Positions 36,301 to 61,729 of a DNA stretch of 64,000 bases are shown one piece after another (position 1 is the stretch's first letter; the number at the start of each line of letters is the position of its first letter). The position numbers and the translations under genes are program-made. The stretch lies in contig CBFFRP010000152.1 in NCBI GenBank assembly GCA_965644295.1, positions 124,001 through 188,000 on the forward strand. The letters are read 5' to 3'. This DNA is from Paraphysomonas bandaiensis. Lineage: Eukaryota > Protista > Chrysophyceae. The notes beneath the pieces are model-generated. The model was not told where the DNA came from, searched no databases, and worked only from the letters and a program-made list of their open reading frames with translations.

Positions 36301-39300
36301 TCGCCGCTGAGCAAGTAAATCACATGCAACGAGAATTAGAGGACCTTCAGCCTGAGCTTGTTGAGTCCGCTCAAGCAACTGAAGTCCTGATGGGTCAGAT
36401 CGAGGAGAAAATGCCTGGCGTTCTCGAGACACGGAAAGTTGTGTCTGCAGAAGCGGCAGTTGCCCAAGGGGAAGCAGACATTGTTCAGAAGCAAAAGGAC
36501 GAAGTGGAAGCAGACCTTGCCGTTGCCATTCCTGCCCTGGAAGAGGCGATCGCTGCATTAAATACAATCAAGCCTGCTGATATTAACGAAATAAAAGCAC
36601 TGTCCAAACCACCGGAGAAGATTCGTATGGTGTGTAAAGCGGTGTGTATTATGCTTGATATCAAGTCCCAGCGTATTCCTGACCCTGATGACCCGTCGAA
36701 GAGAATCATGGACTATTGGGGACCGTCACAGAGAATGTTGGCTGATCCTAATTTCATAAATAACCTAGTCAATTATGACAAGGATAATATGAATCCAAAA
36801 ATTGTCAGCGAAATAAAAAAGAACTTCATTGAAAATGAAGAGTTTGAGCCTGCAAAAATTGCAAAAGCGTCCAAGGCAGCTGAAGGTATGTGTCGCTGGT
36901 GTTTTGCCATGATCACCTACGATAGAGTTGCAAAGATTGTTGCTCCGAAGAAGGCTGCTCTGGCCGAGGCGGAGGAAAAGTTGAACAAGACAATGGCAGC
37001 TTTGAATGCCAAAAAAGCTGCACTGCAATCTATTGAGGATGATCTTGCCTCTCTTCAAACGCAGTTAGAAAATGCAAAGCAGAAAAAGATAGATCTCGAA
37101 ACTCAAGCCGACCAGTGTGACAAGAAAATTGGACGCGCAAATCAACTGCTTGATGGACTGGGTGGGGAACGAGATAGGTGGTCAATGTTCGTTGAAAATC
37201 TCGGTGAAAAGTTCAAGAAACTGACCGGTGATGTGTTGGTTTCGTCTGCCTTGTTAGCGTATCTAGGCCCTTTCACTGCTGTCTACCGACAGAAACAGAT
37301 GAGCATGTGGGTTGACAAGATGAAAGAGCATAAAATTTCATGCTCAGACAATCCTACTCTGACGTCTACTCTCGGCGATGCTGTCTTGATTCGGCAGTGG
37401 AATATTGATGGCCTACCTACAGACAGTTTCTCTGTTGATAATGGAATTATCGTATTTAATGCAAGGCGATGGCCCCTAATGATCGACCCTCAAAGTCAGG
37501 CCAATAAATGGATTCGGAACATGGAAAAGAGCAATAACTTACAAGTAATTAAGCTTACAGATGCCAACTACCTGAGAGCACTTGAAAACTCTATCCAATT
37601 CGGTTCTCCTGTTCTGTTGGAGAATGTTGGCGAAGAACTGGATCCTTCACTGGAGCCACTTCTGCAGAAACAGTTATTCAAGCAAGGAGGTGTGCTCTGC
37701 ATTCGCCTTGGCGATGCTACTGTTGAGTACAGTGAACATTTCAGATTTTATATCACGACGAAGTTACGAAATCCTCATTACCTTCCAGAAGTGTCTGTAA
37801 AGGTTACCCTCCTAAACTTCATGATTACACCAGAGGGTTTGGAGGATCAATTGCTGGGTATTGTTGTGTCTCAAGAACGTCCTGATTTAGAAGCTCAGCG
37901 CAACAATTTGATCATTGAATCTGCGGAGAATAAGCGCCTTCTGAAAGAGATTGAGGATCGCATATTGCATATTATGAGCTCCTCGTCGGGAAATATTTTG
38001 GAAGATGAGACTGCTATTCAGACCCTCAAGGACTCTAAAACTTTATCCGATGAAATATCTGTAAAGCAGGCAATAGGAGAAGAAACGGAGCAAACTATTA
38101 ATCAAGTGCGTCAGAGTTACTCGTCGGTTGCGTATTATTCGCAAATTCTCTTCTTTTGTATTGCGGATTTGGCGAATATTGAGCCTGTATATCAGTATAG
38201 TTTAACGTGGTTTATAAATTTGTTTATCTCGTCGATCAAACTTTCTGAGAAAGGTCGCGACGTTAAGAAGCGTTTAGAAAATCTGTCTGCCCATTTTACG
38301 TATTCTCTTTATCGCAATGTTTGTAGAAGTCTCCTAGAGAAAGACAAAATGTTGTTTTCATTTTTATTAACCACTCGAATTCAAGCGGGCGAAAATCGCT
38401 TGGATCCTGCAGAATGGTATTTCGTGTTAACTGGAGGTATGGGTCTAGATAACCCGCACAAGAAGCCGGAGAGTGCCTCTTGGTTGAACGTAAAGTGCTG
38501 GGATGAAATATGCCGTTTAAGTGATATTCCTAAATGGAGCTCATTTAAAACAGATTTTGTGGAGCATATTGATCAATGGAAGGAAGTTTATGATTCCTTG
38601 ACTCCACAGGATGACCCTTTCCCTGGAATTTTCGAAAATGTTTGGGGACTCTCTAGGTTGTGTGCAATACGTACAATTCGACCGGATAAAGTTGTGTTGG
38701 CTGTCCAGAAGTTTGTCATAGAGGACATGGGAGAGAAGTTTGTTAAGCCTCCACCCTTTGACCTTCAAGCTTGTTACAACGACTCATCTGCCGTTGTACC
38801 ACTGGTTTTTATTTTGTCTCCAGGATCTGATCCAATGGGTGCTGTTCTTCGCGCTGCTGAGGTGCTGAAGACCACTGTTGACCCCATATCACTTGGTCAA
38901 GGACAAGGTCCAAAAGCTGAGAAGCTAATTGAAAGGGCCAAGCAGAAGGGAAGTTGGGTTGTCTTACAGAATTGTCATTTGGCACCGTCATGGATGACCA
39001 CGTTAGAAAAGATATGCGAGGATTTGGATCCAGATTTGGTTCATGCGGGGTTCCGCTTGTGGTGTACCACTTACCCCAGTGACGTTTTCCCCGTGTCTGT
39101 GCTACAAAATGGTGTAAAGATGACAAACGAACCTCCGAAGGGTTTGCGTGCCAATCTAATTGGATCTTATAATGCAGATCCAATTGCTAATGATGATTTC
39201 TTTGACTCATGCGTGAAAGGTTTTGAGTTTCGTAGGCTTATATTTGGGTTGTGTTTCTTCCACGCAATTGTTCAAGAACGGAGATTATATGGTCCTTTGG

Positions 39301-40592
39301 GCTGGAATATTCCGTACGAATTTAATGAATCAGACATGCGAATCTCGGCTCAACAATTACTTTTGTTCCTTAATGACAATGACTTCGTGCCATATAAAGC
39401 TCTGATGTACACTGCTGGTGAGTGTAATTACGGTGGTCGCGTCACGGACGATAAGGATAGAAGGACTCTGACATGCATTTTGGAGCGGTTTTATTGTCCT
39501 GAGTTTCTCGAAGAAAATCACAAAATATCTCCTTCTGGCGAATTTGTGTGTCCACCAGATGGCTCCAGGGATGCCTATGTTCATTTTGTGGAGAATCTAC
39601 CATTGGTTGCTTCACCAGAGGTGTTCGGAATGCACGATAATGCTACTCTCACACGTGACCAAAATGATACTAATGCCCTTTTGTCGTCCATGTTAGACAC
39701 GGAGAGTGGGGGAGGAGGAAGTGGAGGAGGTGGTGGCGACGGACCGAGTAGAGAGGAAATAATCTCCACAGCTGCATCTGAAATATTAGCAAAAATCCCT
39801 CCAAATTTCGATATGGAAGCAGCACAACTGAAGTATCCAGTTCTTTGGGAGGAGAGTATGAATACTGTTCTCTGTCAAGAATTAATTCGCTTCAACAATC
39901 TGCTCTCGTTAATTAGAACTAGTTTGGGTAACATTTTGAAGGCAGTGAAGGGTTTAGTGGTGATGTCTTCTGATCTTGAAATACTGTCAAATTCATTATT
40001 CTTCAACAAAATCCCGGTAATGTGGAAAGCGAGATCATATCCAAGTTTGAAGCCGCTCGGAAGTTACGTCACTGATTTGCAAGTCAGGCTTGAATTCTTT
40101 GATGGCTGGCTTAAAAATAAACCTCCTGCGGTATTTTGGCTCTCTGGATTTTTCTTTACGCAAGCATTTTTGACAGGTGCAGCTCAAAACTTTGCACGAC
40201 GATACACGATTCCAATCGATGATGTGGTCTTCGACTTCGAAATGAAGGCGGAGTCTTCCTATGATGAAGGACCAAATAATGGTGTGTATACGTATGGTCT
40301 CTTCCTTGAGGGTTGTCGCTGGGATCCTGACCAATTTATACTGAATGAATCACTTCCAAAGATTTTATTTTCGCCAGCTCCTATCATACACTTTGCGCCT
40401 TATCGAACCAGTGATATTCCAGATTATCCGCACTACAAGTGCCCGGTGTATAAAACTTCAGATAGGAGGGGAGTATTGGCTACCACTGGACACTCCAGTA
40501 ACTTTGTGTGCTTCATTAACATGCCATCAGATCAACCTGAGCGTCATTGGGTAGAGAGAGGTGTGGCAATGCTTACTCAATTGGATGATTAA
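27321..40592 (+). CDS. Axonemal dynein heavy chain, single-headed inner-arm class (DNAH3/7/12-like)
   Basis: A 4347-aa ORF plus two short 5' exons (ATG at 27321). P-loops are GPAGTGKT, GNPFSGKT, GPTGTGKS and GVGGSGRQ. Also present: RLVITPLTDRCY, GLDYLAMAKFFKGLASSGAWACFDEFNRI, the stalk/MTBD coiled coil, and the C-terminus CPVYKTSDRRGVLATTGHSSNFV...HWVERGVAMLTQLDD typical of the single-headed class. Confidence 0.96.
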
Positions 40593-44790: not shown

Positions 44791-47700
44791 TCAGCGGAAC
44801 CCTTCCCGAAGTCTTCTATTCTCTTCGACAAGACCGTTTATTTGCTCTTTAAGACTTGTGATATAATGTATTTTCTGCTTTTTGTTGGTATGCCCCAGCA
44901 ATGCATCATGCTCGAGTAAGATTTGGTCGTACTTTTCTTTGACTTCGCGTAAGTCATGCTTGCAATTCCGTAATTCCTGGAATAACTAAATAAGGCTAAA
45001 ATATATAAGCTGTAAAGAATACCGCTTCACGCTCTGATAATTCAGTAGCCAAATTTTTCTGAGATTTAAGCAACTCTCTCATAGTAAACAATTCGTTTTC
45101 CAATTCTTTATGTTGTGTAAGTAGCGCTTCTTTTTCGCTGTGCAAGTGGTCAATAGCACCCTTCAGTGTTCTCTGTTCTCCTTCACTCTGCAGTGCACAT
45201 CAAAATCAATGTATTACTATAATAGAACTTACTCTTTCAACTTTCAGTTCCAGCTCTTGCTTTAGTTTTGCAATGTTTCTGTACTCATCAAGTTCAGTCT
45301 TGTTTTCAACTATTTTTTCTTCAAGACTGCGAATTTGAGTCTTTAAGTCAGTTACAGTACTACTCATTGCAATTTCGGTCCTTTCATATTCCTGACATAT
45401 CTACATAAAGTAATATAATAAAAGAAAAAACATTAGCAATACAATATTTTCACCTTTGTTTTTGCCATATTCAAACTGTCGATGTCATTCTTGAGGCCTG
45501 ATATAATTTCTTGAGATTCAATGGATTTCTTGGCAAGCCTATAGTTGTCAGCTTGATGGCTTGCAATATCAGTCTCAAGAGTATGAATCCTGGATATCAT
45601 ATCCTGTTGTTCAGCGGCATAATCCTCCACACGAGCATTCAAATCATCAATTTGCAGTAACATACTGGCATTTTCTTCCTTCAATGATACGTTAATATCG
45701 TTTACCGAGTCACGTTGAGCAAATGTCTCTTCCAGCTCTGCTCTCACAAACCTTAAATCTCTAACCGTCTGAGAAAGCTGAGCGTCTAATTCTGAATTTT
45801 TGCTTTGCATGTCACTGAATTTACTCGTCATTTCAGACATACTGCATTTCAATTCTTCTCTGTCTTTTTCAATCAACTCGAGCTCCCTAATAGCATCACT
45901 GAGCTCTTTTTCTGATTTATGAAGATCATTAGAAAGATTCGCCACGGAATTCTTCGCCTCTAGTAGCTCATTTGATAGTTCATTACACTGTCTTTGAAAC
46001 TCCGCATTCTTATCAGTAAGGCTTTGAATTGTACATTGTTGATCAGCGAGTTGGTCTGCTGCGGCGTCGTACTTGTTCTGAAGAGACGCACTAGCTGCAT
46101 GGCGCTCAATGCAGTTCTTTTCACTCGCTGCCAATAAATTCGTCAGATTAGACTCACTTTTAAGTAGGCCATCAATTTTCTCTTCTGCCGACTTAACGAT
46201 ATCTTTGTACTCATTTAACGATTGTGTATGCGCAGCACTCATATCCCTAATTTGACATGTGAGTGCACTGTTTTCTGCATTTAATTGATCTAATAAATTT
46301 TGTTGAGCAGATTTATCTCTCTGCGCCGCGTCGCGGAATTCCTCAAGTTCTGATGTCTTGAATTCTAAGCAGCTGTTGAGTTCGTCAACTCTCACCGCCA
46401 ATTTCTCACAATCTTTCAAAGCATTGCTGTAGTTGTCCACATGATTCGCCACATCAGACTTCATCGACAGCATCTCTGAGCTCAACTGTCCACATCTTGC
46501 TACGACTTTCTCGTTTGTAGTCCTCAGTGCCACGATGGTTTTACTCAACTCATCTTTGTCTGCTTCTGCCTCTCGCAATTGTTCAGATAGCTTCTCAATA
46601 TGTTGCTCAGAGGCCTTGGCTGCACTGTCTAAACGAGATATCTCACTATCTTTACTGGAACAAAGGGTGGATAACTCAGACACTTTAGACTCTGATACCA
46701 TCAGTTGATCTTTTACCTCGGCGAGAGACTGTTCCACAACCTCTAGAGTTTCACGTTGCATCGTATGCTGAGAAAGAATTTCAGTGTACGCATTTTCTGC
46801 AGCTTCTAAATCTCTACGTGCAGAATTACGACTTTCCTCAAGCTCAGTATTGACACAATCCAACGAATCAGACATTTCGAACATTTTCTTCTGAAGACTT
46901 TCGCGCTCAAGGTGCGCATTTTTACAATCCTCCGCAAGGGAAGAAACCGTATTTTGAAGGATTTTAATTTCGTCTGTCAGTTTATCGCATTTCTGCTTCG
47001 CTTCCATATTGACAGTTTTCAAATCCTCGATGGCTTTCTCATCATCAATACCACGAGAATGAGCCTCTTGCAATTGTTCAGATAGTTTCTCAATATGTTG
47101 CTCAGAGGCCTTGGCTGCACTGTCTAAACGAGATATCTCACTATCTTTACTGGAACAAAGGGTGGATAACTCAGACACTTTAGACTCTGATACCATCAGT
47201 TGATCTTTTACCTCGGCGAGAGACTGTTCCACAACCTCTAGAGTTTCACGCTGCGTCGTATGCTGAGAAAGAAGCTCTTGATTTTGTTCTACAAGATTCT
47301 TTTCTCTAGAAACGCAGTCAGACAACTTTTGGTGCATCTCTCTCAATTCTACATCAAATTTTTCGCGAAGCAGTTCTATTTCCTCTCTGTGTTTCTCTAG
47401 TTCCATGTGATATTTTGTTTCTGTCTCTTCCAAATGAGACTGTAAATCAGTGTATGACTGTTCAACTCTTAGTTTTTCATCAATCGCTTCAGCTTTATGT
47501 TTTTGGGACTGCTCCAATATCTCTTTGAGATAGTCAATCTCCTGTTCGAGTTCAAATCTGTCATGCATTTCTGATTCCCATTCAGAGCGCTGAGTCTCGA
47601 ACTCCTCTTGTTGCTGTGTTAGGTGTAACTTAAGTGATTCAATTTCATGATCTTTCTCTTCTTCAATGCGCTCTATTTCTTCATGTAGTCCTTGACAGTC

Positions 47701-48120
47701 AAGTTCCTTTCGGCGGAGCTTATCTGCTGCCCTCTGAGCTTTCTTGTCGAGCTTAGATTGCGCTTGCCTCCAGATTACTTCATGGTATTTCTCTTTAGAC
47801 GAGTTGGATGAAAGAATGCGCTTGTATTGTTTTTCGACATTCTTGTACTTGAGTTGTATTCCGGCATATTCACTCAGCTTACGTTCTTGTTGTGCGATAG
47901 TCCTCTCAAGTGATCTTAACTGCTTATCTTTATCATTCAACTGAACATTAAGCTTCTTAACTTCTTTCTCAGCTTCAGTTGGAAGTCTTGATTCAATATT
48001 ATGAGGATGAAGACAGGATGATGTACGAGAACGTTTGTTTCCTCTTGTTATAGTGCCATTAGGGAGAGTGTTCTCTTTACAGATATGAGTCTTACTATTT
48101 CCAAGTTTAGGGGTCTGCAT
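44791..48120 (-). CDS. Long coiled-coil protein with a C-terminal HMMR_C-type (RHAMM / kinesin-12 tail-like) basic-zipper motif, multi-exon
   Basis: An 895-aa coiled-coil ORF plus three further short exons. The last exon reads ELRNCKHDLREVKEKYDQILLEHDALLGHTNKKQKIHYITSLKEQINGLVEENRRLREGFR* (stop 44791-44793), matching LLGHxNxKQKIxxxxxLKxE of HMMR/KIF15 C-termini. No motor domain is visible. Confidence 0.8.
46575..47273 (-). repeat. Intragenic direct duplication, 204 bp (46575-46778 and 47070-47273), offset 495 bp (165 codons)
   Basis: The peptide LSQHT(T/M)QRETLEVVEQSLAEVKDQLMVSESKVSELSTLCSSKDSEISRLDSAAKASEQHIEKLSEQL occurs twice. I counted 3 nucleotide differences. Confidence 0.95.
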
Positions 48121-48675: not shown

Positions 48676-51600
48676 ATGGGTAAGTAGACCTCCTCTCTCC
48701 CTCTCACTATATATAACTATATACATAGACTGCTTACGTATTGGTGATTATATCACTTTAAAGACCCCTAAATATGATAGTTATCTCTTTGCTGATGGGA
48801 TTCTTGTGGAAGATTTAGCAGTTGCGGAGACTAATAAAATTCTTGCATTTGAAGAGGCCTTATTTTGTATTCACTATCCTCGTCAATATTCTGCAGCAAG
48901 AGAGTTAGAAGAATTCACTGAATCAAATCTTATTGCTGAAGGAACTATATCAAAAGATAAGACTACTGAAAAATATATGGCTGCATTGAGGGTAATAGTC
49001 CATATGTATGATGTCTGTTTACTGAAAATTACATATCCAGAGGGGCCGAGACAATGAAAATAAGCTCAATGACAATTATATGGCTCAGAAAATTGGCACA
49101 CCAATACAGTTTGGTGATGTCATCCAGGTAGGTGCCATATATGTTCATAGTTTATCGTATTGGTTATGGTTCTGTAGCTCCTTCATGTGAAGTCGGGAAA
49201 GTTTATGACAGTAATTCCCGACCGCCTAGCCTCCCATGAAAGAGAAAACATGGTTGTGTCTTTGAGTGAAACTGGTAACTCATATTCCTGGCTTCAAATC
49301 CAGCCTCGATATAAAATAGATCGTGAAGGAGACAAGGTTCTCACTGGAACTGAAGTACTACTAAAGGTGTCCGAGCGGCCGAACGAATACGTTCATTGCT
49401 CTGACCGCACCCCCCCGAAAGGAGCATTGAGAGAAATCAACTGCTCATTGGAAACGTCGTCTTGGAAGTTGTCTGCTTTTCAGACCGTAAAAGATGCATC
49501 AGATAAAAATCTTTTGCTTATATCTCAACTTGTGGTGATACATGACCCGGAGACACGATCCAATATCCAAGTTGTAGAAACTGAATCCAAAAATGGGAAG
49601 CCTTCATATGGCATAGCTATACAGCCAGTACATGCTAGTGGGGAGTTAGACTCAATGGCTCTATGGGTATTGGAGTCCAAAAGTGTGGTACAGGGGGGAA
49701 CAATTCAATGGAAGTCGGACTATATACGCTTCAGAAATCTGAATACTGGAAAGTACCTCATGCTCAAGTCAGACAAGAAGTCCTCCGGAGATAAGAGTGT
49801 GAAGTATGAACTGGGAGTGGCGGACTCTCTTCATTCCAGTGGCACTCTCTTTACCTTACACGAGATGTATGGGCAAAGCTTATTTCTCTCGAATGCCAAA
49901 GCCATGCAGATGTGCCAAAACAACATGTATATCGAAAGGGGAGAATATTCGGACGAAGATGGAACTTTCCTATCCAGCGCGACGAAAGACAAGAGTCGTG
50001 CTGTGAGTTTGCTTATTCACCGTTATGTTCAGGTGCTGAAAAGGAACCAGACAGAAGTTGGTGAGGTGATTGTAGAGAAGCAGGACTACAGTAGCACTAT
50101 AGAAGAGCCGCTGGATGTCTATGTGGGTGTTACTGCCCGTAAGTACCTCACCCACTACATCGAGAACATGGTCGTGCCTACTTTCGAGTTTTCTGCTGGG
50201 ACTCTCTGGCCTGGCTCAGATAGATCTACATTTTATGAGGTGTCTTCGGTTCTGAAGAAAATACTACTCTTTGTTCGAGGTCTCAAAGTGTCAGAAGAGC
50301 TAGAAGCACAGTTAGGAATCGACTCTGCCAATGTACGAACTAACTTTCGTCGAGCACGGCAAGCGATGGCTCTTGAACAAGGAGTGGTGACGAATATTCT
50401 CCTCATGCTAGAACGCCTCATTCCACTTTCTGCACGATTAGATGCCTCGGGTATGAGTTCGAAGTCTTTTGCGTCGAAGTCAGATGAAGAAAAGTCTGTA
50501 CTGCGCATATGTGAGGTGATCGTATCACAGTGTTTTACGCTTTTGTATCACTGTATTGAGGGGAACCCGAGGACTCAGATTGCTGTGGCGGATTCGATGC
50601 CTGTTTTGTTGGCCTATGTAGCGACGCAGCAGTACGCCGCCAAGTGTGTTACGGAGATGCTCTCAACCAACATGGAGTTACAGGAAACGAAAATTGGAGA
50701 GAGGGAAATAAAGATATTTACAGAGAAATTGAGGTCATCCAAAATGAATTCCATGTATCTCAATTTATTGAAGTCGTGCTGTTCTTGCATGGGTAAACCC
50801 ATTGATGGTAACCAGGGTGTTGTTGCTGAAGTTCTTTTTGAAGATACGAGCGATATCATCATTCAAGTCCACCCGGACATGGTGCGGATCAACCGAGTGG
50901 TTTGGGACTCTACAGGAACCTCTCTTTTTATCCCTGCCCAGCCTGAACCGGGATCACCCATGTTAGGTTCCGAATTGCTGGAGCGAGGGATCCCTAACCT
51001 GTCATTGTCGTGGACAACAAAGTCCATTGACTACTCCCCACTGGGGCTTTTTGGAAAATTATCGGTGAACATTCAGGACTTGTATCCTGGTAAATCTCAA
51101 GGTTCAAATTTTACCGAATCTGAAGAATGGCTCATTCAAAAGCGCCCACAAGGGAAGGGCACAATGGCACAATCTCAGAAGCAGGCGGTAGCAGATTACT
51201 TTATCGCAGAACTATATCTAGCTGCTGAGATGTGTTTAGGAAGAAATTACGTCGCAATGCAGAATCTGGAGTCGCTTTTTACTTATAATACACTGGTGAC
51301 AATGATGAAAATGAATGCTAGCGAAGCTCTAAAAGCCGCTGCAACCCGACTTATGCTCTGCCTCTATGTTGACAGAGAACCTCAGATTATCACCACAGTG
51401 CCTTGTCTCACTAGATCTTGGAGCGAAATTGCCAAATCAGGCGTTCCGCAGCTTCCGTATGTCGAAGTCGCCAGAAAGAACCAATTTTCCCTCTTACAGC
51501 AAATGATATCGGAGCACATTAGGGATATGAAGGGAAGACGGTGGGAAGAGCTGTCGGTGTCAATGATGCTTCTACTAAAATACCTCATCATGTTCAACTT

Positions 51601-54600
51601 CTATGGGACGAAAGAAAAGCTGCAAGATGTCATCGAGCCAATCATAGATGCTATTGATCGAAGAGGCATTAAAGTTGATGACGGCGTGGACGCAATTATG
51701 GAAGCAATGGCCGCAGCCGCGCGTGGAAAGCGCAAAGGAAAAAAAAACAAGAAGTTAACAGACTCATCGTCCAAATACACCCTGGAAGGTACTAGTTTTG
51801 AAGACCTCTCAAAGTATGAGGAGGGAAAGGAGTCAATGACAAACATGGATCAATCAGAGGTTTTAAAAGAAGAAGAAGAACAAGGAGAACCAAAGGTTAA
51901 TGAGAACTCTTGGCAAGCCCAGACACTGAATTTATTGGAATCTTTACCTGTGATGACTTTTGTCATTGTATTGGTCTTGGTTGCAATTGCAGTTGCAATC
52001 GTTGAAGCTCTGACAAGTACAAATGAATGGGAGTATTACGTATTCGACTTAATTGTCACATCTATCTTTTGTTTTGAAGTAACTCTGCGCTTCTATTGCT
52101 TCGTATATGTGAACAACTCTGCTCTCCAATTTTTTGCGAATGTGTTGAATGACATCGATGTGGTTGTCGTTATTATTGATTTGGTGATTATTGGTCAACC
52201 GAGTGCTGATAGCGGCGGGGCGCAATTTGTGAAAGCTTTGCGCGCAGCTCGACTGATTCGCCTAATTCGAGTGTTTCGTGCAGCGAGAATTGTACAAAAG
52301 CTGAAAGACATGACGGCAAAGACGTATGATGCCTGGAAAATGCCTGTCCGATATTTGAAAACGCCAAAGCATGAACTCGAAACTATGGTTGAAAGTGTGA
52401 ATATATTGTCGTACATCCAACAGATTATTGAGGATCGAAACTTATCTCTACTACTGCAAGGATTCCAGAGGTGGCAATGTGGAGATGATAAAAGAACCCC
52501 TGGTGAAATATTTGAAGATGTTATTGCTCAATCACAGGACTTAACTTTGGGTTGTGAGAAGTTTGATGCAGTCTTTATTGATATTTTAATGTTTGTTCAC
52601 ACCGACTTGGTACAAGTCGCTTTGGATGTACTTATGGCTCACCATTCAGCTAGAAATTTACTTTTTGTCAATGCCCAGAAGTTGCAACTACTAATATCAC
52701 CTCAGCGGGAGCGCCAGCTGAAGACAATTCGCAATATGCTCCAGGAACTCGAACGGAACGCTGAAACACATGAGCTTTGGGGAGAATTGCAGAGTGAAGA
52801 AGACCACAGAGTCAATCGGCAAACTTTTGAGCATATGAGTGAGTTAGTTCAAATGTGTCGCATTCAATGTACTGAATTAGAATTCGATGAAAAATTCTCC
52901 GCTGATAGAGATATTCAAAATTTGCTTCGTAATTTGGGATTCTTTGATGCTGCACTGAAGATACTGGGGCTTTTACCAGCTGTAAAAAATGTCAGCGAAG
53001 ACGAAGAAGATGAAGTTTCAAAGAATACAAGAAGTTTGATAAGAAATTGCAATGAACTTTTATATTGGTTCTTTAACGATAATACTGAAAACCAGGCCCT
53101 TGGATTCAATGAACTCAATTTCTTCTTGCATTCTCTGGACATGCGCATAAATAGCCACCATGTTATTCATGCAATCTTCAAAAACAATGAACACCTCATG
53201 CGTCAATGTCCTCGCGAATTGATTGAAGAGTACTCTGAGCGTGTGTGCAAATCGGGTAGACACCCCCAGTATCTGGCGATTCTATCATCTGTTACACATG
53301 TCAAAGATAAAAACATACTCGAGAACCAGTACGAGATTGTGAAACACCTTATGGCTCCAGGAAGAATGAAGAAGATGGTGAGATTCTGTGGTGGAAGAGA
53401 AAATCCAGAGTACGAAGAACGTGTCGAGTTGATGAAGCCGTTTTTAAACAAGAAAGATGTCAGCCTAGATGAGCTTCCCAACGAGCTGTCCTATCATTTG
53501 GAGTTTCTCCGTGTTCTGTCCGGGTGTACAGTTGGGCGCATCAATATCACCACCGTGGAAGCCAAAGTACAATCAGTGTATTCATATACTGGTATTCTTG
53601 AAGCTTTAATGGACCCGAGAACTATCGACCTCGCTAAAACCCGTCTGGCACTACTGTTTTTTAACGCAATGATCGAAGTCGAAATCAATATTGGTGGTTT
53701 GGGTGTTGATCCTATGGTGTGGGATTTTATCAAGAGTACAAAAGGTATATTTAAAAAGGCAATAACTGATCTGAAAGCGGTAGAGGAGCATGGCTGGGAA
53801 GGAAGCGCTGTAAACAGACAAAGTATTGAATATGTTATTGTTTGCGTCATGATTTTATCTGGTTTTTTTATGAAGTACTTTGATTTGTCGAACTTTGAGT
53901 CGTTTTCTCGAGATGATAAACCTACGTTGACTATGGACGAAGTACAGGATATTATGACGGGGGTGTTTACACAGCTATACGCCGTAAATGAAATGAAGTG
54001 CAAATGTCTTACCGCTAGTCAACACTTTTACATCGCCAACGCTCTCGATTCAATGCGCAGATATTCTCCAAAATTGACCTCCCTATACCCAGAGATAATT
54101 GTTGGAAAGAACGATGGGGAAGATGATGCGAATGACGATTCCGTAGCTTTAGCAACTGCTGCAGACTTGGAAGAGTCGATTGATGTGAAAATATCGCGTC
54201 AGTTTGAGTCGTTTGTTAGCCAATTGGTAGAGGACGAAAATACAAAACACGCCATCAAAACCGAAAACCACAAGTTTGTGGAGTACATTGATTCTTTACC
54301 ATTCGTAGCCGACAGTTGTGTATCTGATGTCAGATACGAAGCTCTGATAAAAAAGCTCGTTGTGCATGTCCGTGATCGCCTCGAAACAGTTGGTACTGAG
54401 AAGCGATTAGACGCTCGTTGTACACAAACTACTACGTGGATAATTCGATCGTTCCGCACAATGATAGAAAAGCGTTGGGGAATGAGTATATATGAACGGG
54501 ATGAAGATGGAGGCGAGGAAGAAGATATCGCTGCCGCTCCTGTTGTTAATGCTCTGAATAGTTGCGGTGCAACTACACTCTGCTTAGATCTGATAAGTGT

Positions 54601-57520
54601 CGGTATCGACTCCGGCCTCATGCTGGAATCAATGAAGCTATGCGTCGCCATGCTCTTTTTAGAAGGAGGAAACTTGCCAGTACAGAAAACTATGTATGCA
54701 TACCTCAAAAACACGAAGTCTGACTTGTTTTTTCAACAACTCCGCAATTCCATTCAGAAATTGATTAATTGGCACAAATGGCACGATGTGATTGTTCTTG
54801 AAGAAGATCAAGAAGTGGAGCTTCCAGAAGATATCATAGTGGTACGTTTTTTGCAGTTAATGTGTGAGGGACACTACCAGCCCAACCAGGATATCATGCG
54901 GGAACAACCCTCGAATACGATTTCCATCAATCTTCTAGATGATTTTGTCCAGTATTTGAATTGTGTGAGTAGGATTCCTTGCCGAACGAGTACTGATGCC
55001 GCGAGCCGTGTTTCAGCAACGATCTTGGAGGTGATACAAGGTCCCTGTGAGCAGAACCAAGAGCACTTCGCTTTACATACGGAATTAATTGAAACTCTAA
55101 ATCGCATATTACGAGCCAAAACTATTCGTGACTGTGATGAAGATGCGGAGGTAGACTTGAAGAAAACAGCAATCGACATTCTACAGGGCTTACTGGAAGG
55201 GCAGGGTGGGAAAACAACTGTATATGACCGCGTACTCAGTGTCGTACATCTGGACGCGATTCAAATGATGTGCCAACCGGAGAGTAAGAAACTTCTGGAT
55301 GGCGACGAAGAACAGGAGAAAGAAGAGAGTGAAGAGGTAGTTGTTCTGCGGGTCGAGTGCCTAGTGCTGCTTCAGATGCTGTGCGACTACAGACCAGCTT
55401 TGCGCGAAGAGCTGGAGTTATCTTCTGATAAGATTGCAGTGAAAGGGGTTGGTGTGGCGAGCGTGGAGATTTTGTGGTCAGGAGAACTACAGCGAAGGTT
55501 CTTTCACGTTCCGAAGATATGTGACGATCTAGCAAAGGCCTCAAAAGATGCACTTGTAGAATATGTGGACAGGAGTAACCAAGAAAATAAGTTATTGGAT
55601 TTTTTGCTTCGATCCCGTGAGCTCTATCGCGAGATCAAGCACCAGCAAGTGTTAAAGGAGTACAAAGTGAGTGGTATATTTAGTCGTTCGAATCAAGATA
55701 GGGCAACGTGGTTGTCTCTATTTTTAGCCGTTGTGATCAATGCTGTGCTTATATACGACTACCGACTTGAAGATGGTGAACCCTATCTGTCTCCCAATAT
55801 TGCGACTACAGTGGATGCGCTTAACATATTCCAGATTGCATTTTCGAGCTTCACTCTTGTTCTATTTTTAGTCGTTCGTGTGCCGGTGAAGTACCAATCG
55901 AATCTAGCTGCCGGAATGGATCAGTTTCGAACTGTACTGTTCACGTGCACAGATCCCATGACGATGTATTATTTTTTTTATTTACTGATGTCAATATTCG
56001 GTTACAATATCAGCTATTTCTTCTTGACAATTTTGCTCCTTGATATTCTAGTTAAGAACTCCACAGCAAGAGACATTCTGATGGCGGTGGTTTTCCCTCG
56101 TAAGCAGTTGGCAATGACATTTGTACTGACTCTATTTGTCGTGTACATATTTGCTTTTATCATCGTAAGTAGTGATTGTCAATTTGTCTTTATTTTATCT
56201 TACTTGTTGTATTAGTTTTTCAACTTTCGCGATGAATTTTCTCCCGACCGTCGGCACGATGACTGCAAGAATTTATTCAGTTGCTATAAAATCACTCTCG
56301 GAAATGCACTGCGATCACCTGGCGGTATTGGCGACTTCATGCAACATGACCTGGAGTATCGTTATATTGTAGACACACTGTACTTTGTCATCGTTCTAAT
56401 TGTATTGCTCAATGTGATGTTTGGTATTGTTATCGACACATTTGGTAATCTGCGAACAACCAAGGCAGAGAGACAAGCGGACACTACTGGTGTGTGTTTT
56501 ATTTGTGGTATTGATAAACAAATTTTTGATCGTGCAGCTGATGGGGTAAAGGGGTTCCATGACCATATAAAGTCTGATCACAACATGTGGAACTACTTGT
56601 ATTTCATTATTTACATATGGGAGCAGGACAAAGATGATGATGATGGTTTAGAGCAGTTTGTGCGTCGCAGTATTGAAGTCAACGATATTAACTGGTTTCC
56701 AATGAATCGTGCGATGCGGCTCAGTGTCACGGAGAGTTCTGAGGATGAGCTACTGAAGGAACTGAAGGAGGATGTCGTTGCAGCTGACAACAAGATGACC
56801 CAGAAGCTCGCCGCTTTTCAGGCCGAAATAGCAACTACTCTGGATGAGATTGCTAAGAGTGTTATAACTCCTGTGGGAGGTGACGAGAGTTTGTCAGGAG
56901 TACCTTCTCCTGACCGTCTCAATTCAGTCATGGCTCGCACCCAGGACTTTATTGACGAGATGGTAGTTGAGGCTCGCTTGAGTGGAATTCTTCCCGAGGG
57001 AGACCAACTTGGGCTGTCGATGGATATTAGGCGTGGTGCATCGAATGCCCTGAAGGATATGGATGACTTTTCCGAATCCACACAACATAAAAATCCCAGG
57101 TACTGGAAGAAGCTCAAACTTAAAGTGATTGATATACAGGGGTTGTCATTACCTGAAAAGGATATGGAAGGGGTGTCTTGTCGTGTGATTTGCGACAGTG
57201 GAATGTTTTCGGTGTCGTCAGCACAGGTCATTGGGGACAAAGTTTTATTTGAACCGGAAGAAGTGTCGATATGTGAACGCGCTGGACTGGATGACAACCG
57301 ATCCCTACGTATCCAGATTTTGCAAGGGTCCGGTCGAATTGCAAAATTCATTAGTATTGTGGATATATCGTATGAAGACTTGATTGCCTCTACTGATCTC
57401 GTGTACGAAAAGGTGTTTACCCAACCCGACAACCCCAAGCCCTGCGTGCTCTCTATCTATCCCATGGCAACGGATGTCGCATCAGATAGCACTGCTGGTC
57501 TTGACCATGGTTCTCTATAA
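48676..57520 (+). CDS. Inositol-trisphosphate-receptor-like Ca2+ release channel (about 2881 aa) with an inserted voltage-sensor domain and a C-terminal C2-like domain
   Basis: Exons 48676-48679, 48729-48991, 49041-49127, 49178-56164 and 56216-57520 join in frame. IP3R/RyR hallmarks: LRIGDYITL, IQFGDVIQLLHVKSGKFM, IRFRNLNTGKYL (MIR), RQAMALEQ (RIH), VRFLQLMCEGHYQPNQDIMREQ and EVIQGPCEQNQ (RIH-associated), six C-terminal TM helices, pore LRSPGGIGD, LLNVMFGIVIDTFGNLR, and CFICG...HIKSDHNMWNYLYF. Confidence 0.93.
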
Positions 57521-58351: not shown

Positions 58352-61300
58352 TTATGTGTCATTGTCAGAAGAGTCACCGGTGCTGTAAACAGTACTGGGA
58401 TTGCTATCACATTCTGATGAGTGGTCACTACTGCAACTCTCATTGTTTGCGTTATGACTGTCGTGGCCATGCACATTACGTTCAAGAACAATTGCACCGG
58501 AGCTATTTTGTCTGATATATTGTTGCATTCCCTCTATATGATGACAGTTAATAAAATCCAAATCATCCCACCCACAACGATCAAAAAACTTCCTCGGAAT
58601 AAACCAAAAACGATCTGAAATTTGAGGCTTACCCACGACGACATCGCAAGAAGAATCTGGTATTATAAAAGCTGTGTCAATAATACTTTCAAAATTAATA
58701 ATATCCTGAAAAAACTGAGGTTGTCGTCGCCTGTTGTAGCGCAGTACCTCCCACTTATATTTTGAAAACGGGTCAAGAATAGTGGTCGTACATTTTTCCA
58801 TGTATTGAACAATATAGAGATATTTAGTGTTGTTGGCCGCTGACAACTGAAGCATCGATACTATTTGAGCAACTTGTATGTCTCCACTTTCCATTTGGAT
58901 GCATATGAAATCAAAGCGTGGTTTTCGACTCTCTGCCCCTTTCATGGCATGATGAGATCCTTTACCAATGCCACTCTCTTTGTTGGCATTGTAGGTGAGG
59001 GCCTGTATTAACTTCAACGAGATGTCACCACGTTGTAAACAGTTCCAGTTCTTATCACCAAGAGCTTGTTTACAAAAATCAGTAAGGGAGTTACTAGATA
59101 ATTCCTTGTGTCCAATAAATTCTTCCAATTCTATTCCTTCTTCTTCACAAATAAACAAGGAGTGGTTAGCATCAACACATAACCGCACATGTTTGACATT
59201 TCTCATGGGGTAAACTAGAACGACCTCCGGTGGAATTTCTGGCTTCAGAGAGTTTATGTATTCAGTGTCGTGTGTGTGGCACGCGGCTATAAACTCAAGT
59301 ACTCGACAATGATCTTGGCATATTGCTAATGTTAGCATCTCCACATTAGAAGAAGTATACCTCCTGCTTGTGCGTCGCCAGTTTTCGGTTGTAAAATAGC
59401 GATTGCTTGATTCCCAAGTACCCGCATCAGACTTTGATAATGCCCCAAACATGGAAATATTAAGTGAAAGATGCATTACAGAATGGAGTTTGCGCATTAA
59501 TGGACTTGATGGCTGGTTACCAAGAAGTGTTTGTTTCAAATCCCATACCAGTAAAACCTTAGCAACCATATCGTGGCACATACGGTCCACATTCAGGATG
59601 TCACCATCAGTAAAACAGCTTTTCTTGCACTCAAAATAGACGTTCAGCACGGCTTTAATTGCTTGTAACACTTTCTTTGTTACATTGCCTAAACGCAGGT
59701 GCCGTGAATTTTTGCTGCAATAACTGTAGTTGGTATCTGTCGGTAGCACTTGACCATCCGTGCCAATCTAATGTAAAAAGGTGATGTCAAGCACATAATA
59801 TAGAGAATACAATTTAGAAAAACATACCGCAAACAGAAGTTGCAATAGTGCCGTGATGAATTCACTTGATCTATATCCACCTCCGGAACCAGTCGAGTGG
59901 CCCTTTTCCTTTTTACTTTTATTGCTCATAATGTGCATCAAGCCTTTCTTGAAGACTGTCCAATTCACGTGTGGCATATCAGGAACCTGAGGCATCAACT
60001 TAAGTCTGGCATCCAACACGCCCTTAATATTTCGAAATGTTCGGTCTACTGTTGTGCTAATACTGTCAACAACGCTAAGAATCCATAAAACAAGACTTTT
60101 TGCAATACCAGCACAAAACAGGTGAAATAAGTCTTGAGGATTATTGAAGCAATGGTTGTTGTAGCCCATAAACGCATGATGGAAGGCGTTTACAAACGGC
60201 ATGATGCATCTATTATCAAGTAACTTACGAACATACTTCTCTTCTTTGTCTGATAGCTGACCACTATTCACATTTCGGCACTGTTCAGCAATGGCATTGC
60301 CATCTCTCCTCGGATGAAGGTCTGGGTTATAAAAAACACCGGCCCTCAGAGGATACTCACATGTAACACATGCAAAGCGGGAATTTCCTTCGTATAAGCC
60401 AAACTGTCGATGGATGGCCGGGTCATCTCCAATGCTAAAAGGATGAAAGGTATAAACGGTAATTAAACCCTTTCCTAACACATACATCTCTGCACCTCTA
60501 GAAGAAGCAGCTTTGAGAGGAGCCGTAACCATACTCCAGAATTCTTTTTCCAAGTGCAAGTTAAACCACCTGACTTCCTTCCCTGCTGCGGTTCGGCTCA
60601 TTCCACGTTCCATCAAATGAGAAATCAGAGCTTCGACACTTATCGTGCTTGTGATGTCAGGAATAAAACCTAAGCAAAACTTTGCAATATTTTTCCGAAT
60701 TAACTCATCGCTGAAATTGCCGCATGTCCCCAGGACTGGCACAGACTTGATGTTGGCACCATGCCCCATAGCAACCCCGTCATGATACAGTAGACATGGC
60801 ATTAATTTGCCTTCAGGATTTTTTTCTTGGCGTATAACTCGCTCCGTGTTCTTCGCCCAGGATGATGACATGAGATCACCAACATAGTTCTCACCAGTAT
60901 TAATATCTGTCATGGAAAATGTATCATAATGAACGTGCTCTTTCCACGAGAACTGAATTGTCGGGTCGACGGCCAGATAACTTAGCATTTCCAATGGGTC
61001 TCGTGCTCGAACAATGATTTCGTCAGGTTTCTGTCCAGAAATTTTCCAAGATTCCATTTCCCACGAAGATGGCCAACCTATAGACTTTTCAACATATCTG
61101 TAATGTTGTGTTCTCTTTTTGAAATTCGACACAACTGTCTTCCATGATTTTGGAAGTTCTTCACAAGGTTTGAATAAGCGAATCAATTCCAGAAGTGCAT
61201 CTCCTGTAGATCGGCTTAACTTGCACTTTCTTCCAAATGCATACAACTTGAGAAGCAAAATATCTGACATGTTATGATTACTCGAAGTGCTGACAGCTTC

Positions 61301-61729
61301 AATAAAGCTTTCAAGATTCATAGCTCCCAATGCATCCACGCCATAAGACTTGTCGTAAAACACTTCCTGGAGCTTCTTATACGTGGAGAGTGGTTTGTCT
61401 TCCGCGTCATAATCTGGATGACAGATTGGAAACTCTGTATTTCCAGTTGGGCTTGCTTCCTCCAGTCTCTGATGTTGCCACATGTACATAGGAATTGATG
61501 AGTCCTCACAGTCACTGTACTCATCAATTCCACTGTCATCTTGATTGTAATCATCATGAATAGTGTAAGCCTGAGGTCCATATGCAGCTTTTCGTTTCTT
61601 AGAATACTGCTCTGATGTACAAATCTCTGATTCTGAAGACAGTGGCGAGCAGTATCTTCCATGGTTCCCCAGACTCTGACTTGAACTGAATATTCCCTGA
61701 CATATTGCGCATTTCCACAAGCTGTCCAT
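58352..61729 (-). CDS. Plavaka-family transposase (about 1105 aa), two exons, apparently intact
   Basis: Intron 59768-59827 (60 bp, phase 0) joins the 653-aa and 465-aa ORFs (LLFA/IGTDGQVLP). N-terminal zinc finger CAICQGIFSSSQSLGNHGRYC; then LYHDG, PVLGTCGN, GFIP, IGDDP, CVTC, PQDLFHLFCAG, DARL and KLHSVMHL...MFG...DAGTWESSN..FTTENWRRTS, as in Plavaka transposases. A BAH-like C-terminal region follows (RFDFICI...VAQIVSML...YIVQYM). Confidence 0.85.

What the first reader, a model, noticed from the sequence alone, without database searches (positions are those of the whole stretch)
51910..52320. A complete S1-S4 voltage-sensor domain inserted in the cytosolic solenoid of an IP3-receptor-like channel
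Seen in sequence: inside the uninterrupted exon 4 (about aa 1030-1160 of ~2881) are four hydrophobic segments with voltage-sensor signatures. S1 is LPVMTFVIVLVLVAIAVAIVE; S2 is FDLIVTSIFCFEVTLRFY (F-x-x-E-x-x-x-R); S3 is FFANVLNDIDVVVVIIDLVII (N-x-x-D); S4 is KALRAARLIRLIRVFRAARIV, with seven K/R at every third position (52232-52288). Established knowledge: canonical IP3R and RyR channels have only the C-terminal 6-TM domain, and their S4 is not a charged sensor. That 6-TM domain is also present here, so this sensor is extra. The flanks LIMFNFYG...IIDAIDR and ETMVESVNILSYIQQIIEDRNLSLLL align by eye with IP3R1 LIYFGFY...LLAILD and [26 protein letters not shown], which border a known variable loop. 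Four TM segments would keep both flanks cytosolic. A polybasic patch (RGKRKGKKNKK, about 51722-51754) precedes the sensor. Inference: this is a 10-TM channel in which membrane voltage acts on the IP3R regulatory solenoid, conceptually a one-polypeptide analogue of CaV1.1-RyR1 coupling. I do not know of this architecture having been described.
Basis: partly seen in the sequence, partly recalled or inferred. Interest (0 to 1): 0.93.

Follow-up and report, generated by a model that had tools for sequence, protein, structure and literature searches.

The report
Calcium-release channel with built-in voltage sensor
A marine stramenopile protist makes a giant IP3-receptor/ryanodine-receptor-type calcium channel with a complete, fully charged voltage sensor inserted in the middle of its cytosolic regulatory arm. 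I found no published description of this design, which belongs to a large conserved gene family and may couple membrane voltage to a calcium-release-type channel within one protein.

Summary
Window 48676-57520 (+) holds a five-exon gene for a 2881-aa RyR/IP3R-superfamily channel with beta-trefoil/MIR, two RIH domains, RIH_assoc and a C-terminal 6-TM pore (GGIGD filter).

Between the RIH domains, aa 1041-1164 form a true S1-S4 voltage-sensor domain (VSD):
- Pfam Ion_trans scores 40-46 bits against a cut-off of 25.
- AlphaFold pLDDT is 85.
- Z is 13-14 and rmsd 2-2.8 Å to NaV/CaV VSDs.

A spliced 8.8-kb transcript contig runs unbroken through the VSD. At least 57 cluster representatives share the architecture, including chrysophyte and pelagophyte proteins. 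Eight paralogues sit in this genome. The S2 Phe/Glu, the S3 Asp and seven S4 basic positions are 83-100% conserved, as is the short post-S4 linker into the solenoid.

Canonical IP3-binding residues are absent, while the Ca2+-activation motifs are kept. My best reading (0.58) is a Ca2+-activated channel modulated by voltage through an intrinsic sensor in the same membrane as the pore. Function and localisation are untested.

Eight literature searches and four papers read found no description, although unannotated homologues are public. The scan flagged the same architecture on another piece of this genome. Verdict: new variant of a known kind, high interest.

The parts
48676..57520 (+). Whole gene: exons 48676-48679, 48729-48991, 49041-49127, 49178-56164 and 56216-57520; CDS 8646 nt, 2881 aa
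   Evidence: ORF and translation. Exons 1-3 are inferred from GT..AG sites and homology to the intronless relative P0006. The last intron (56165-56215, 51 nt, GT..AG) is removed in contigs of four runs. The 8819-nt transcript contig length fits 91 nt of 5'UTR, the CDS and 82 nt of 3'UTR (inference).
49187..49495 (+). C-terminal part of the Ins145_P3_rec (beta-trefoil) domain. It starts in the upstream exons and a MIR match follows.
   Evidence: Pfam PF08709 58 bits; PF02815 23.7 bits, just under its cut-off
50318..50866 (+). RIH domain 1 (aa 499-681)
   Evidence: Pfam PF01365 70 bits
51722..51754 (+). Polybasic patch (aa 967-977) within the variable, predicted-disordered linker before the sensor
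   Evidence: Sequence. The linker has pLDDT below 50. A comparable patch occurs in only 45% of relatives.
51908..51943 (+). Conserved amphipathic pre-S1 helix (S0, W-Q...L-x-F-L-E-S)
   Evidence: Consensus of 82 relatives; helix in both models
51944..52015 (+). VSD helix S1 (aa 1041-1064)
   Evidence: AlphaFold helix 21-44; hydropathy 3.07
52028..52114 (+). VSD helix S2 (aa 1069-1097) with F1082, E1085 and R1089
   Evidence: F in 79 of 82, D/E in 100%, K/R in 100% of relatives
52121..52195 (+). VSD helix S3 (aa 1100-1124) with N1109, D1112 and D1119
   Evidence: D1112 is invariant (82 of 82), D1119 is 94% conserved, N1109 is in 73 of 82
52220..52315 (+). VSD helix S4 plus its cytosolic extension (aa 1133-1164). 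Basic residues at 1137, 1140, 1143, 1146, 1149, 1152 and 1155.
   Evidence: K/R conserved at 83, 98, 98, 96, 94, 96 and 95%; one 32-residue helix in the model
52316..52393 (+). Short conserved post-S4 linker (W1171, P1174, R1176, Y1177, E1184, T1187, M1188) leading into the next solenoid helix
   Evidence: Conservation. The S0-to-linker distance is fixed at 135-150 aa in all but one of 42 relatives (one at 179). pLDDT is 80-89 in context, and the following helix is 97-98.
52895..53356 (+). RIH domain 2 (aa 1358-1511)
   Evidence: Pfam PF01365 62 bits
54839..55111 (+). RIH_assoc domain carrying the Ca2+-site motifs (…CEGH… and …E-V-I-Q-G-P-C…)
   Evidence: Pfam PF08454 73 bits; aligned to the RyR motifs FLQLLCEGHN and TEYIQGPC
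55703..56449 (+). C-terminal 6-TM pore domain (aa 2294-2525, interrupted by the 51-nt intron). Selectivity filter GGIGD at 56321-56335.
   Evidence: Spliced translation; hydropathy; Pfam Ion_trans S6 match; alignment A2

Best explanation
This is a real, expressed gene for a tetrameric-type cation channel of the RyR/IP3R superfamily. A canonical S1-S4 voltage-sensor domain has been inserted into a surface loop of its central helical (linker) region, giving 10 TM helices per subunit.

Shown:
- the architecture;
- its presence in mature mRNA;
- its conservation across a large ochrophyte family and eight paralogues in this genome;
- near-complete conservation of the gating-charge-transfer centre and of six to seven S4 charges.

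Inferred:
- All TM segments are inserted co-translationally into one membrane, so the sensor reads the potential across the membrane that holds the pore.
- On depolarisation S4 moves away from the cytosol. It pulls on the short, conserved, structured post-S4 linker and the solenoid helix that follows.
- That shifts the allosteric path that links the N-terminal domains to the pore gate in IP3R/RyR. This resembles the way S4 drives the cytosolic enzyme in VSP or the cytosolic domains in SLC9C1.
- IP3-contact residues are lost and the RyR/IP3R Ca2+-activation motifs are kept. The channel is therefore most likely a Ca2+-activated, voltage-modulated Ca2+/cation channel rather than an IP3-gated one.
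- It probably sits in an electrically active membrane (plasma, flagellar or vacuolar) rather than a silent ER.
For: VSD identity:
- Pfam 40-46 bits against a cut-off of 25.
- The PDB profile matches CaV/NaV repeats at 30-53 bits each, TPTE2 at 58, Kv2.1 at 57.6 and Ci-VSP at 54.5.
- AlphaFold pLDDT is 85.5 and pTM 0.71.
- Z is 13-14 with rmsd 2.0-2.8 Å to VSD-IV of NaV/CaV. Only VSD proteins top an exhaustive PDB search.

Expression and continuity:
- One 8819-nt contig of run X1 lies gaplessly on 50700-56164 and then jumps the 51-nt GT..AG intron.
- The same joint appears in a polyA marine metatranscriptome and two other runs.

Selection:
- 36 synonymous against 4 non-synonymous differences between strains. 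Both differences inside the VSD are synonymous.
- F1082, E1085, R1089, D1112, D1119 and the seven S4 basic positions are 83-100% conserved in 82 relatives that are only 24-61% identical in this segment.

Family:
- 57 representatives of 50%-identity clusters match on both sides of the VSD as well as in it.
- The Pfam order RIH, Ion_trans, RIH, RIH_assoc, Ion_trans holds in P0122 and in the intronless P0006.
- There are eight paralogues in G000. In six of them the VSD and RIH_assoc lie in one open frame.
- VSD and pore-domain divergence are correlated (r = 0.71 over 435 pairs), which fits one old insertion inherited vertically.

Coupling:
- The post-S4 linker is conserved and of fixed length, while the pre-S1 linker is variable and disordered.

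Ligands:
- IP3-contact residues are replaced and the Ca2+-site motifs are kept.
Against: - There is no functional or localisation datum of any kind.
- The sensor has no S4-S5 linker to a pore of its own, so the coupling route is hypothetical.
- A co-fold of the VSD with the pore domain gave no answer.
- The predicted models give no geometry relative to the membrane.
- From my recollection of IP3R structures (not tested here), the equivalent loop is not membrane-proximal in IP3R1. A cis arrangement would then need a differently shaped cytosolic assembly.
- If the protein lives in the ER, that membrane is thought to be nearly isopotential. The SR stays electrically silent in muscle (abstract of PMC6080890, seen).
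- The IP3-site and Ca2+-site statements rest on pairwise HMMER alignments plus residue numbers recalled from the literature.
Confidence: 0.58

Rival explanations
1. The domain keeps the VSD fold but is not used to gate the channel by voltage. It would serve as an extra membrane anchor or assembly module that holds the solenoid at the bilayer. Alternatively it would be a lipid or ligand sensor, like the S1-S4 bundles of TRP channels and of IP3R/RyR themselves.
For: S1-S4-like bundles without voltage function are common in TRP, IP3R and RyR channels (established knowledge). There is no S4-S5 linker or pore directly attached. A polybasic patch in part of the family hints at lipid contact.
Against: Non-sensing S1-S4 bundles lose the S4 arginine ladder and the charge-transfer centre. 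Here seven basic positions, the S2 Phe and Glu and the S3 Asp are 83-100% conserved over deep divergence. Sequence and fold are closest to true sensors, not to TRP-type bundles (Z 13.5 against about 10).
Confidence: 0.2
2. Trans arrangement. The pore domain sits in one membrane (cortical ER or another store) and the inserted VSD sits in the apposed plasma membrane. One polypeptide then spans a membrane contact site and does what CaV1.1 plus RyR1 do as two proteins.
For: The insertion is in the cytosolic solenoid, about 1130 residues before the pore helices. The post-S4 linker is only about 17 residues long and structured, so the sensor must sit close to the solenoid surface. A voltage sensor is most useful in the plasma membrane. 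There is a weak hint of a C2-like module at the extreme C-terminus.
Against: I know of no integral membrane protein with helices in two separate bilayers of the secretory pathway. Co-translational insertion would put all ten helices into the ER membrane (established knowledge). The C2 hint is not supported by Pfam. No structural or localisation evidence exists.
Confidence: 0.07
3. The VSD is itself a conduction pathway, a proton or omega-type pore like Hv1. It would add a second permeation route regulated by the large cytosolic assembly.
For: VSD-only proteins can conduct, as Hv1 does. Four sensors per tetramer would be present.
Against: S1 has no acidic residue at mid-membrane depth (the Hv1 selectivity Asp). 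The hydrophobic plug Phe is conserved and the arginine ladder is complete with no gap. The best profile matches are CaV/NaV repeats, TPTE2, Kv2.1 and Ci-VSP; no proton-channel chain is among the 60 rows shown.
Confidence: 0.04
4. Artefact: a misassembly, a gene-prediction fusion or an unspliced intron that happens to look like a VSD.
For: None found. Only the general caveat that the upstream exons were modelled by homology.
Against: The VSD lies in one 6987-nt open exon. A spliced transcript contig covers it. The same insertion at the same site occurs in eight paralogues and in dozens of independent assemblies and transcriptomes, including an intronless gene. The codon-level substitution pattern shows purifying selection.
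Confidence: 0.01

Closest known systems
Canonical IP3 receptors and ryanodine receptors (RyR/IP3R superfamily)
   Same: N-terminal beta-trefoil/MIR region, two RIH domains, RIH_assoc with the Ca2+-site motifs, a C-terminal 6-TM pore with a GGIGD filter, and a post-S6 Cys/His zinc-finger motif.
   Different: They have no charged voltage sensor anywhere, and their own S1-S4 is a non-sensing bundle. Here an extra S1-S4 with seven S4 charges is inserted between the RIH domains. IP3-contact residues are not conserved, and no SPRY or RyR-repeat domains were found.
CaV1.1-RyR1 conformational coupling (skeletal-type excitation-contraction coupling)
   Same: A voltage sensor of the CaV/NaV type would control a giant RyR/IP3R-type release channel through its cytosolic assembly.
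   Different: That system uses two proteins in two membranes plus adaptor proteins. Here the sensor and channel are one polypeptide and most probably lie in one membrane. The functional coupling is inferred, not shown.
Voltage-sensing phosphatases (Ci-VSP, TPTE2)
   Same: A stand-alone S1-S4 sensor whose S4 continues through a short conserved linker into a cytosolic effector rather than a pore. The family profile matches TPTE2 at 58 bits and Ci-VSP at 54.5 bits, with Z 12.2 to the Ci-VSP VSD.
   Different: The effector is a PTEN-like phosphatase at the C-terminus. Here the sensor is an internal insertion, with both ends tied to a solenoid that regulates an ion pore.
SLC9C1 (sperm-type Na+/H+ exchanger with VSD and CNBD)
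   Same: A VSD grafted onto a non-voltage-gated transport protein that acts through cytosolic domains. SLC9C-like proteins (Na_H_Exchanger, Ion_trans S1-S4, cNMP_binding) are among the best hits that lack IP3R-type flanks, for example P0160 at 66.8 bits and 35% identity. Z is 12.2 with rmsd 2.0 Å to the SpSLC9C1 VSD.
   Different: The carrier is an exchanger, not a channel, and the VSD follows the transport domain rather than interrupting a cytosolic solenoid.
Oomycete PKDRR proteins (PMC7399828)
   Same: Stramenopile-specific chimeric Ca2+-channel architectures that mix RyR-related modules with another channel family.
   Different: PKDRR proteins are polycystin/TRP channels that carry RyR 'R' domains. 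They have no RIH/RIH_assoc core and no inserted VSD. That paper's survey of oomycete ITPR homologues mentions no internal ion-transport domain.

Membership tests
Voltage-sensor domain of the voltage-gated cation-channel superfamily (S1-S4 half of Pfam PF00520) | Significant match to the family model restricted to S1-S4 | tested here: met
   46.3 bits (E 4e-12) against a cut-off of 25, profile positions 6-118 of 241
Voltage-sensor domain of the voltage-gated cation-channel superfamily (S1-S4 half of Pfam PF00520) | Four-helix transmembrane bundle with the VSD fold | tested here: met
   AlphaFold helices 21-44, 49-77, 80-104 and 113-144, pLDDT 85.5. Z 13-14 with rmsd 2-2.8 Å over 112-126 residues to NaV/CaV VSDs.
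Voltage-sensor domain of the voltage-gated cation-channel superfamily (S1-S4 half of Pfam PF00520) | S4 with basic residues at every third position | tested here: met
   Seven positions (aa 1137-1155), each 83-98% K/R in 82 relatives
Voltage-sensor domain of the voltage-gated cation-channel superfamily (S1-S4 half of Pfam PF00520) | Gating-charge-transfer centre: S2 aromatic, S2 acidic and S3 acidic residues | tested here: met
   F1082 in 79 of 82, E1085 100% D/E, D1112 in 82 of 82
Voltage-sensor domain of the voltage-gated cation-channel superfamily (S1-S4 half of Pfam PF00520) | Gating charge movement in response to voltage | not testable with these tools
   Needs electrophysiology or voltage-clamp fluorometry
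RyR/IP3R superfamily of Ca2+-release channels | N-terminal Ins145_P3_rec/MIR region, two RIH domains and RIH_assoc | tested here: met
   PF08709 58 bits, PF01365 70 and 62 bits, PF08454 73 bits; MIR 23.7 bits, just under its cut-off
RyR/IP3R superfamily of Ca2+-release channels | C-terminal 6-TM pore with a GG(V/I)GD filter and a post-S6 Cys/His motif | tested here: met
   GGIGD at aa 2483 after splicing, followed by CFICG…H…H
IP3 receptor proper (IP3-gated) | Basic and Thr/Tyr residues that contact IP3 (R265, T266, T267, G268, R269, R504, K508, R511, Y567, R568, K569 of IP3R1; list recalled from the literature) | tested here: not met
   The HMMER alignment to IP3R1 gives I, A, I, Q, P at 265-269, A at 508, L at 511, N at 567 and P at 568. 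Only R504 is kept, and K569 becomes R. Alignment quality in the beta-trefoil part is moderate.
Ryanodine receptor proper | SPRY domains and RyR repeat (R) domains | tested here: not met
   No SPRY or RyR-domain hit at E <= 0.1 in the 2342-aa exon product or the C-terminal exon
Ca2+-activated RyR/IP3R gating site | Glu (with His) in the …CE(G/N)H… motif and Glu/Gln in the …E-x-x-Q-G-P-C… motif (identities recalled from RyR1 and IP3R3 structures) | tested here: met
   FLQLMCEGHY and LEVIQGPC align to RyR FLQLLCEGHN and TEYIQGPC. Ca2+ binding itself was not tested.
Hv1-type voltage-gated proton channel | Acidic selectivity residue in mid-S1 and a VSD-only protein with a coiled coil | tested here: not met
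   S1 (aa 1041-1060) is purely hydrophobic, and the domain is internal to a 2881-aa protein

The most novel reading that the evidence does not exclude
One polypeptide bridges a membrane contact site. The inserted S1-S4 sensor sits in the plasma membrane while the C-terminal pore sits in an apposed Ca2+ store. Depolarisation would then open a release channel directly, giving a single-protein version of skeletal-muscle excitation-contraction coupling that evolved in stramenopile protists.
Probability: 0.07. Interest if true: 0.97.

Novelty: new variant of a known kind. Interest (0 to 1): 0.86.

Why it matters
Known voltage sensors drive their own pore (KV, NaV, CaV, HCN, TPC), a proton path (Hv1), a phosphatase (VSP) or an exchanger (SLC9C1). 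A 2024 review of voltage sensors covers these classes, and a term search of it found no mention of an inositol-trisphosphate receptor or of a sensor built into a release channel (PMC13095418).

RyR/IP3R channels are the textbook case of channels that sense voltage only indirectly, through a separate CaV protein. A family in which a fully charged sensor is wired into the regulatory solenoid would be a new class of sensor-effector coupling. It would also be a natural experiment on how force applied to the solenoid gates these giant channels.

It could further explain how some ochrophyte flagellates turn electrical signals into Ca2+ signals. The family is large, expressed in ocean metatranscriptomes and expanded to eight paralogues in one genome, so it is likely to be physiologically important. 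It also offers compact test objects such as the intronless gene of P0006.

Tried and rejected
- Complex prediction of the VSD with the 6-TM pore domain of the intronless relative P0006 returned 'no answer' (score 0.00). This is neither support nor evidence against a cis contact.
- The two further RIH_assoc loci of the genome (C395, C144) are too divergent for a flank comparison. tblastn found only RIH_assoc and pore similarity in C144 and nothing in C395. I could not show a 'before insertion' paralogue.
- I did not build a VSD tree against Hv1, VSP, TPC and CaV sensors. No Hv1, VSP or Kv sequences could be brought into the script, and a 120-residue domain resolves poorly. The origin of the sensor stays open. 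SLC9C-like sensors score 66.8 bits, single CaV/NaV repeats up to 53 bits, and TPTE2 and Kv2.1 about 58 bits.
- The possible C2-like C-terminal module rests on language-model similarity of 0.91 with low recognition. Pfam gives no support even at E 10, so it is kept only as a lead.
- The organism could not be named because run and organism labels are coded. The dynein heavy chain in the window is 83% identical to Ectocarpus fasciculatus, 81% to Epipyxis and 80% to Mallomonas. It is therefore an ochrophyte, and probably not a diatom, since diatoms are reported to lack IP3Rs (PMC11085791).
- Eight literature searches (one further call was rejected for a term-format error) and four papers read found no description.
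- The search of earlier findings near the locus was blank.
Full report
**1. The observation**

The region 51910-52320 lies in a 7-kb open frame (49187-56215, +).

Pfam finds the RyR/IP3R domain set in this frame: Ins145_P3_rec, MIR, RIH and RIH_assoc. It also finds an Ion_trans match of 40.4 bits (cut-off 25) that covers only profile positions 7-118 of 241, which is S1-S4. The isolated segment scores 46.3 bits, E 4e-12.

The two RIH domains are at aa 499-681 and aa 1358-1511, so the sensor (aa 1041-1164) lies between them.

**2. Gene model and expression**

- Homology to the intronless relative P0006 and GT..AG sites give three tiny upstream exons.
- The frame ends at an apparent stop at 56215. 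Laid contigs of four runs skip 56165-56215 (51 nt, GT..AG). These runs include a polyA marine metatranscriptome.
- After this splice the protein reads through a pore loop with a GGIGD filter and S6.
- The full product is 2881 aa.
- In run X1 a single 8819-nt contig lies without a gap on 50700-56164 and then on 56216-56600. It is therefore spliced RNA, and it retains the sensor. Its length equals the CDS plus about 91 nt and 82 nt of UTR (inference).
- Of 40 listed differences between that strain and the window, 36 are synonymous. Both differences inside the sensor are synonymous.

**3. The inserted segment is a voltage-sensor domain**

- A profile of 82 family sensors matches every VSD repeat of CaV and NaV channels (30-53 bits each). 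It also matches TPTE2 (58 bits), Kv2.1 (57.6 bits) and Ci-VSP (54.5 bits) in the PDB.
- AlphaFold with that alignment gives pLDDT 85.5 and pTM 0.71, with helices at S0, S1, S2, S3 and a 32-residue S4.
- Foldseek's top 50 matches are all VSD channels.
- VIA-align gives Z 13-14 with rmsd 2.0-2.8 Å over 112-126 residues to VSD-IV of NaV1.7, NaV1.5, CaV3.2 and CaV1.1.
- An exhaustive comparison of a larger model with 48,161 chains again puts only VSD proteins on top. These include SpSLC9C1 and Ci-VSP at Z 12.2.
- Hydropathy gives S1-S3 and the C-terminal pore helices. S4 is charged, as expected.

**4. It is a family, not a one-off**

- A word-indexed search restricted to the sensor found ten full-length relatives that are 49-62% identical in the VSD and carry the same Pfam set.
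- An exhaustive HMMER search of 1.84 billion representatives found 299 hits. Of the 158 sequences then compared by BLAST, 57 match the window protein on both sides of the sensor, at lengths of about 2000-3700 aa.
- In P0122 and P0006 the precomputed Pfam order is MIR, Ins145_P3_rec, RIH, Ion_trans, RIH, RIH_assoc, Ion_trans. The P0006 gene is a single 8.5-kb exon.
- Named members are:
  - KAJ1428063.1 (Ochromonadaceae sp. CCMP2298);
  - KAJ8601792.1 / A0AAD7UD70 (Chrysophaeum taylorii, auto-named 'Inositol 1,4,5-trisphosphate receptor');
  - proteins of Epipyxis sp. PR26KG and a 'Chrysophyte H1' assembly.
- A Pedospumella encystans protein (P0330) is a family homologue by the whole-protein search. 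Its own VSD was not checked.
- The window's genome (62.6 Mb) has eight loci where the sensor lies about 2.7 kb upstream of RIH_assoc on the same strand. In six of them both lie in one open frame. Two further RIH_assoc loci have no detectable sensor.
- Paralogue sensors are 27-59% identical to this one and keep the S4 ladder.
- Pairwise divergence of sensor and pore domain is correlated (r = 0.71). This fits one ancient insertion inherited with the channel.

**5. Signs of function**

Across 82 sensors that are only 24-61% identical to this one, the key positions are conserved as follows:

| Position | Conservation |
|---|---|
| S2 Phe (F1082) | 79 of 82 |
| S2 acidic (E1085) | 100% D/E |
| R1089 | 100% K/R |
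| S3 D1112 | invariant |
| D1119 | 94% |
| Seven S4 basic positions | 83-98% K/R |

- The 17-residue stretch after S4 and the start of the next solenoid helix are conserved (W1171, P1174, R1176, Y1177, E1184, T1187, M1188).
- The distance from S0 to that stretch is fixed at 135-150 aa in all but one of 42 relatives (one at 179).
- The linker before the sensor varies from 28 to 228 aa and is predicted disordered.
- In a 441-residue model the post-S4 stretch has pLDDT 80-89 and the following helix 97-98.

The sensor is therefore tied firmly to the solenoid through S4 and loosely on the other side. This is the geometry expected if S4 movement is the output.

**6. Where it is inserted, and what kind of channel it is**

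- HMMER aligns aa 783-942 to IP3R1 723-896 and aa 1245-1320 to IP3R1 1058-1133. The sensor thus sits in the C-terminal part of the first helical domain, inside a stretch that is 162 residues in IP3R1 and 303 here.
- The IP3-contact residues of IP3R1 are almost all replaced. The residue list is from my knowledge of the literature.
- The RIH_assoc region aligns best to RyRs. It keeps the CEGH and E-x-x-Q-G-P-C motifs that I recall as the Ca2+-activation site.
- No SPRY or RyR-repeat domains are present.

The protein is best called a RyR/IP3R-superfamily channel. It is probably Ca2+-activated and not IP3-gated.

**7. Mechanism**

Shown are the architecture, the expression and the conservation. 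The rest is inferred.

- A single polypeptide is inserted co-translationally, so the simplest model puts all ten helices in one membrane, with both sensor ends in the cytosol (standard orientation).
- Depolarisation would move S4 outward and pull the conserved linker and the central solenoid. That would bias the allosteric path to the gate, as S4 drives the enzyme in VSP or the cytosolic domains in SLC9C1.
- ER and SR membranes are thought to be nearly isopotential (abstract of PMC6080890, seen). I therefore expect at least some paralogues to reside in an excitable membrane.

I give this reading 0.58. The rivals are:
- a non-sensing anchor or lipid module (0.20), which is weakened by the intact charge ladder;
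- a trans arrangement across a contact site (0.07), which is attractive geometrically but has no precedent in membrane-protein biogenesis;
- a conducting VSD (0.04);
- an artefact (0.01).

**8. Novelty**

- Eight full-text searches found no description of a VSD inside a RyR/IP3R-type channel.
- Four papers were read:
  - PMC7399828 on oomycete ITPR and PKDRR proteins;
  - PMC9694693 on oomycete IP3 signalling;
  - PMC11085791 on diatom and stramenopile Ca2+ channels;
  - PMC13095418, a 2024 review of voltage sensors.
- Homologues are public but unannotated or auto-named.
That agrees with the paralogues found here.

I rate this a new variant of known kinds: two well-known modules in an undescribed combination that suggests a new sensor-effector coupling.

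**9. Limits**

- There are no functional data and no localisation.
- No full-length or tetramer model was possible.
- The co-fold test gave no answer.
- The origin of the sensor is unresolved. Among the best hits that lack IP3R-type flanks are SLC9C-like exchangers and a MORN-repeat protein.

Noticed in passing
window 57050-57517 (+), C-terminal ~155 aa of the same protein: The tail after the pore and zinc-finger region is conserved in P0006. Language-model features resemble C2 domains (score 0.91; 79 of 100 hits in the C2 set), but recognition is low and Pfam finds nothing even at E 10. If real, a C-terminal lipid/Ca2+-binding module would bear on which membrane the cytosolic cap faces.
   Followed up: partly
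proteins P0160, P0205, P0179, P0166: Among the closest sensors that lack IP3R-type flanks are SLC9C1-like proteins (Na+/H+ exchanger, S1-S4, cyclic-nucleotide-binding domain) and a protein with a VSD plus MORN repeats. This is a hint that the sensor may derive from an 'effector-coupled' VSD lineage rather than from a channel repeat.
   Followed up: partly
G000:C395:128689-129099 (+) and G000:C144:125455-125757 (-): Two further RIH_assoc-bearing loci in the same genome have no detectable VSD and are very divergent from the window protein. They may be this organism's conventional IP3R-like channels.
   Followed up: partly
window 27549-40592 (+): A 4347-aa single open frame encodes a complete axonemal-type dynein heavy chain (DHC_N2, AAA_6 to AAA_9, MT stalk, Dynein_C). 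The organism is therefore flagellate. The nearest named relative is Ectocarpus fasciculatus (83% over residues 1000-2000).
   Followed up: partly
window 23639-25177 (+): A 512-aa CRT-like (chloroquine-resistance-transporter-like) membrane transporter, Pfam PF08627 at 293 bits.
   Followed up: no
window 59768-61729 (-): A 653-aa ORF with a Plavaka-family transposase domain (46 bits), probably a DNA transposon next to the channel gene.
   Followed up: no
window 48680-48728, 48992-49040, 49128-49177, 56165-56215: All four introns of the gene are tiny (49-51 nt, GT..AG) and exon 1 holds only four coding bases. The VSD is not flanked by introns, so there is no trace of recent exon shuffling.
   Followed up: partly
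window 55391-56576, run X5: One metatranscriptome contig joins 55391 to 56576 (skips 1184 nt, ends GA..CT, only 25 letters on the short side). It is most likely a chimeric contig or a relative's sequence, not an isoform.
   Followed up: no
window 14168-21189 (-) and 45433-48120 (-): Long coiled-coil ORFs (weak Filament, GAS and crescentin-rod matches below the cut-offs) of unknown function flank the region.
   Followed up: no
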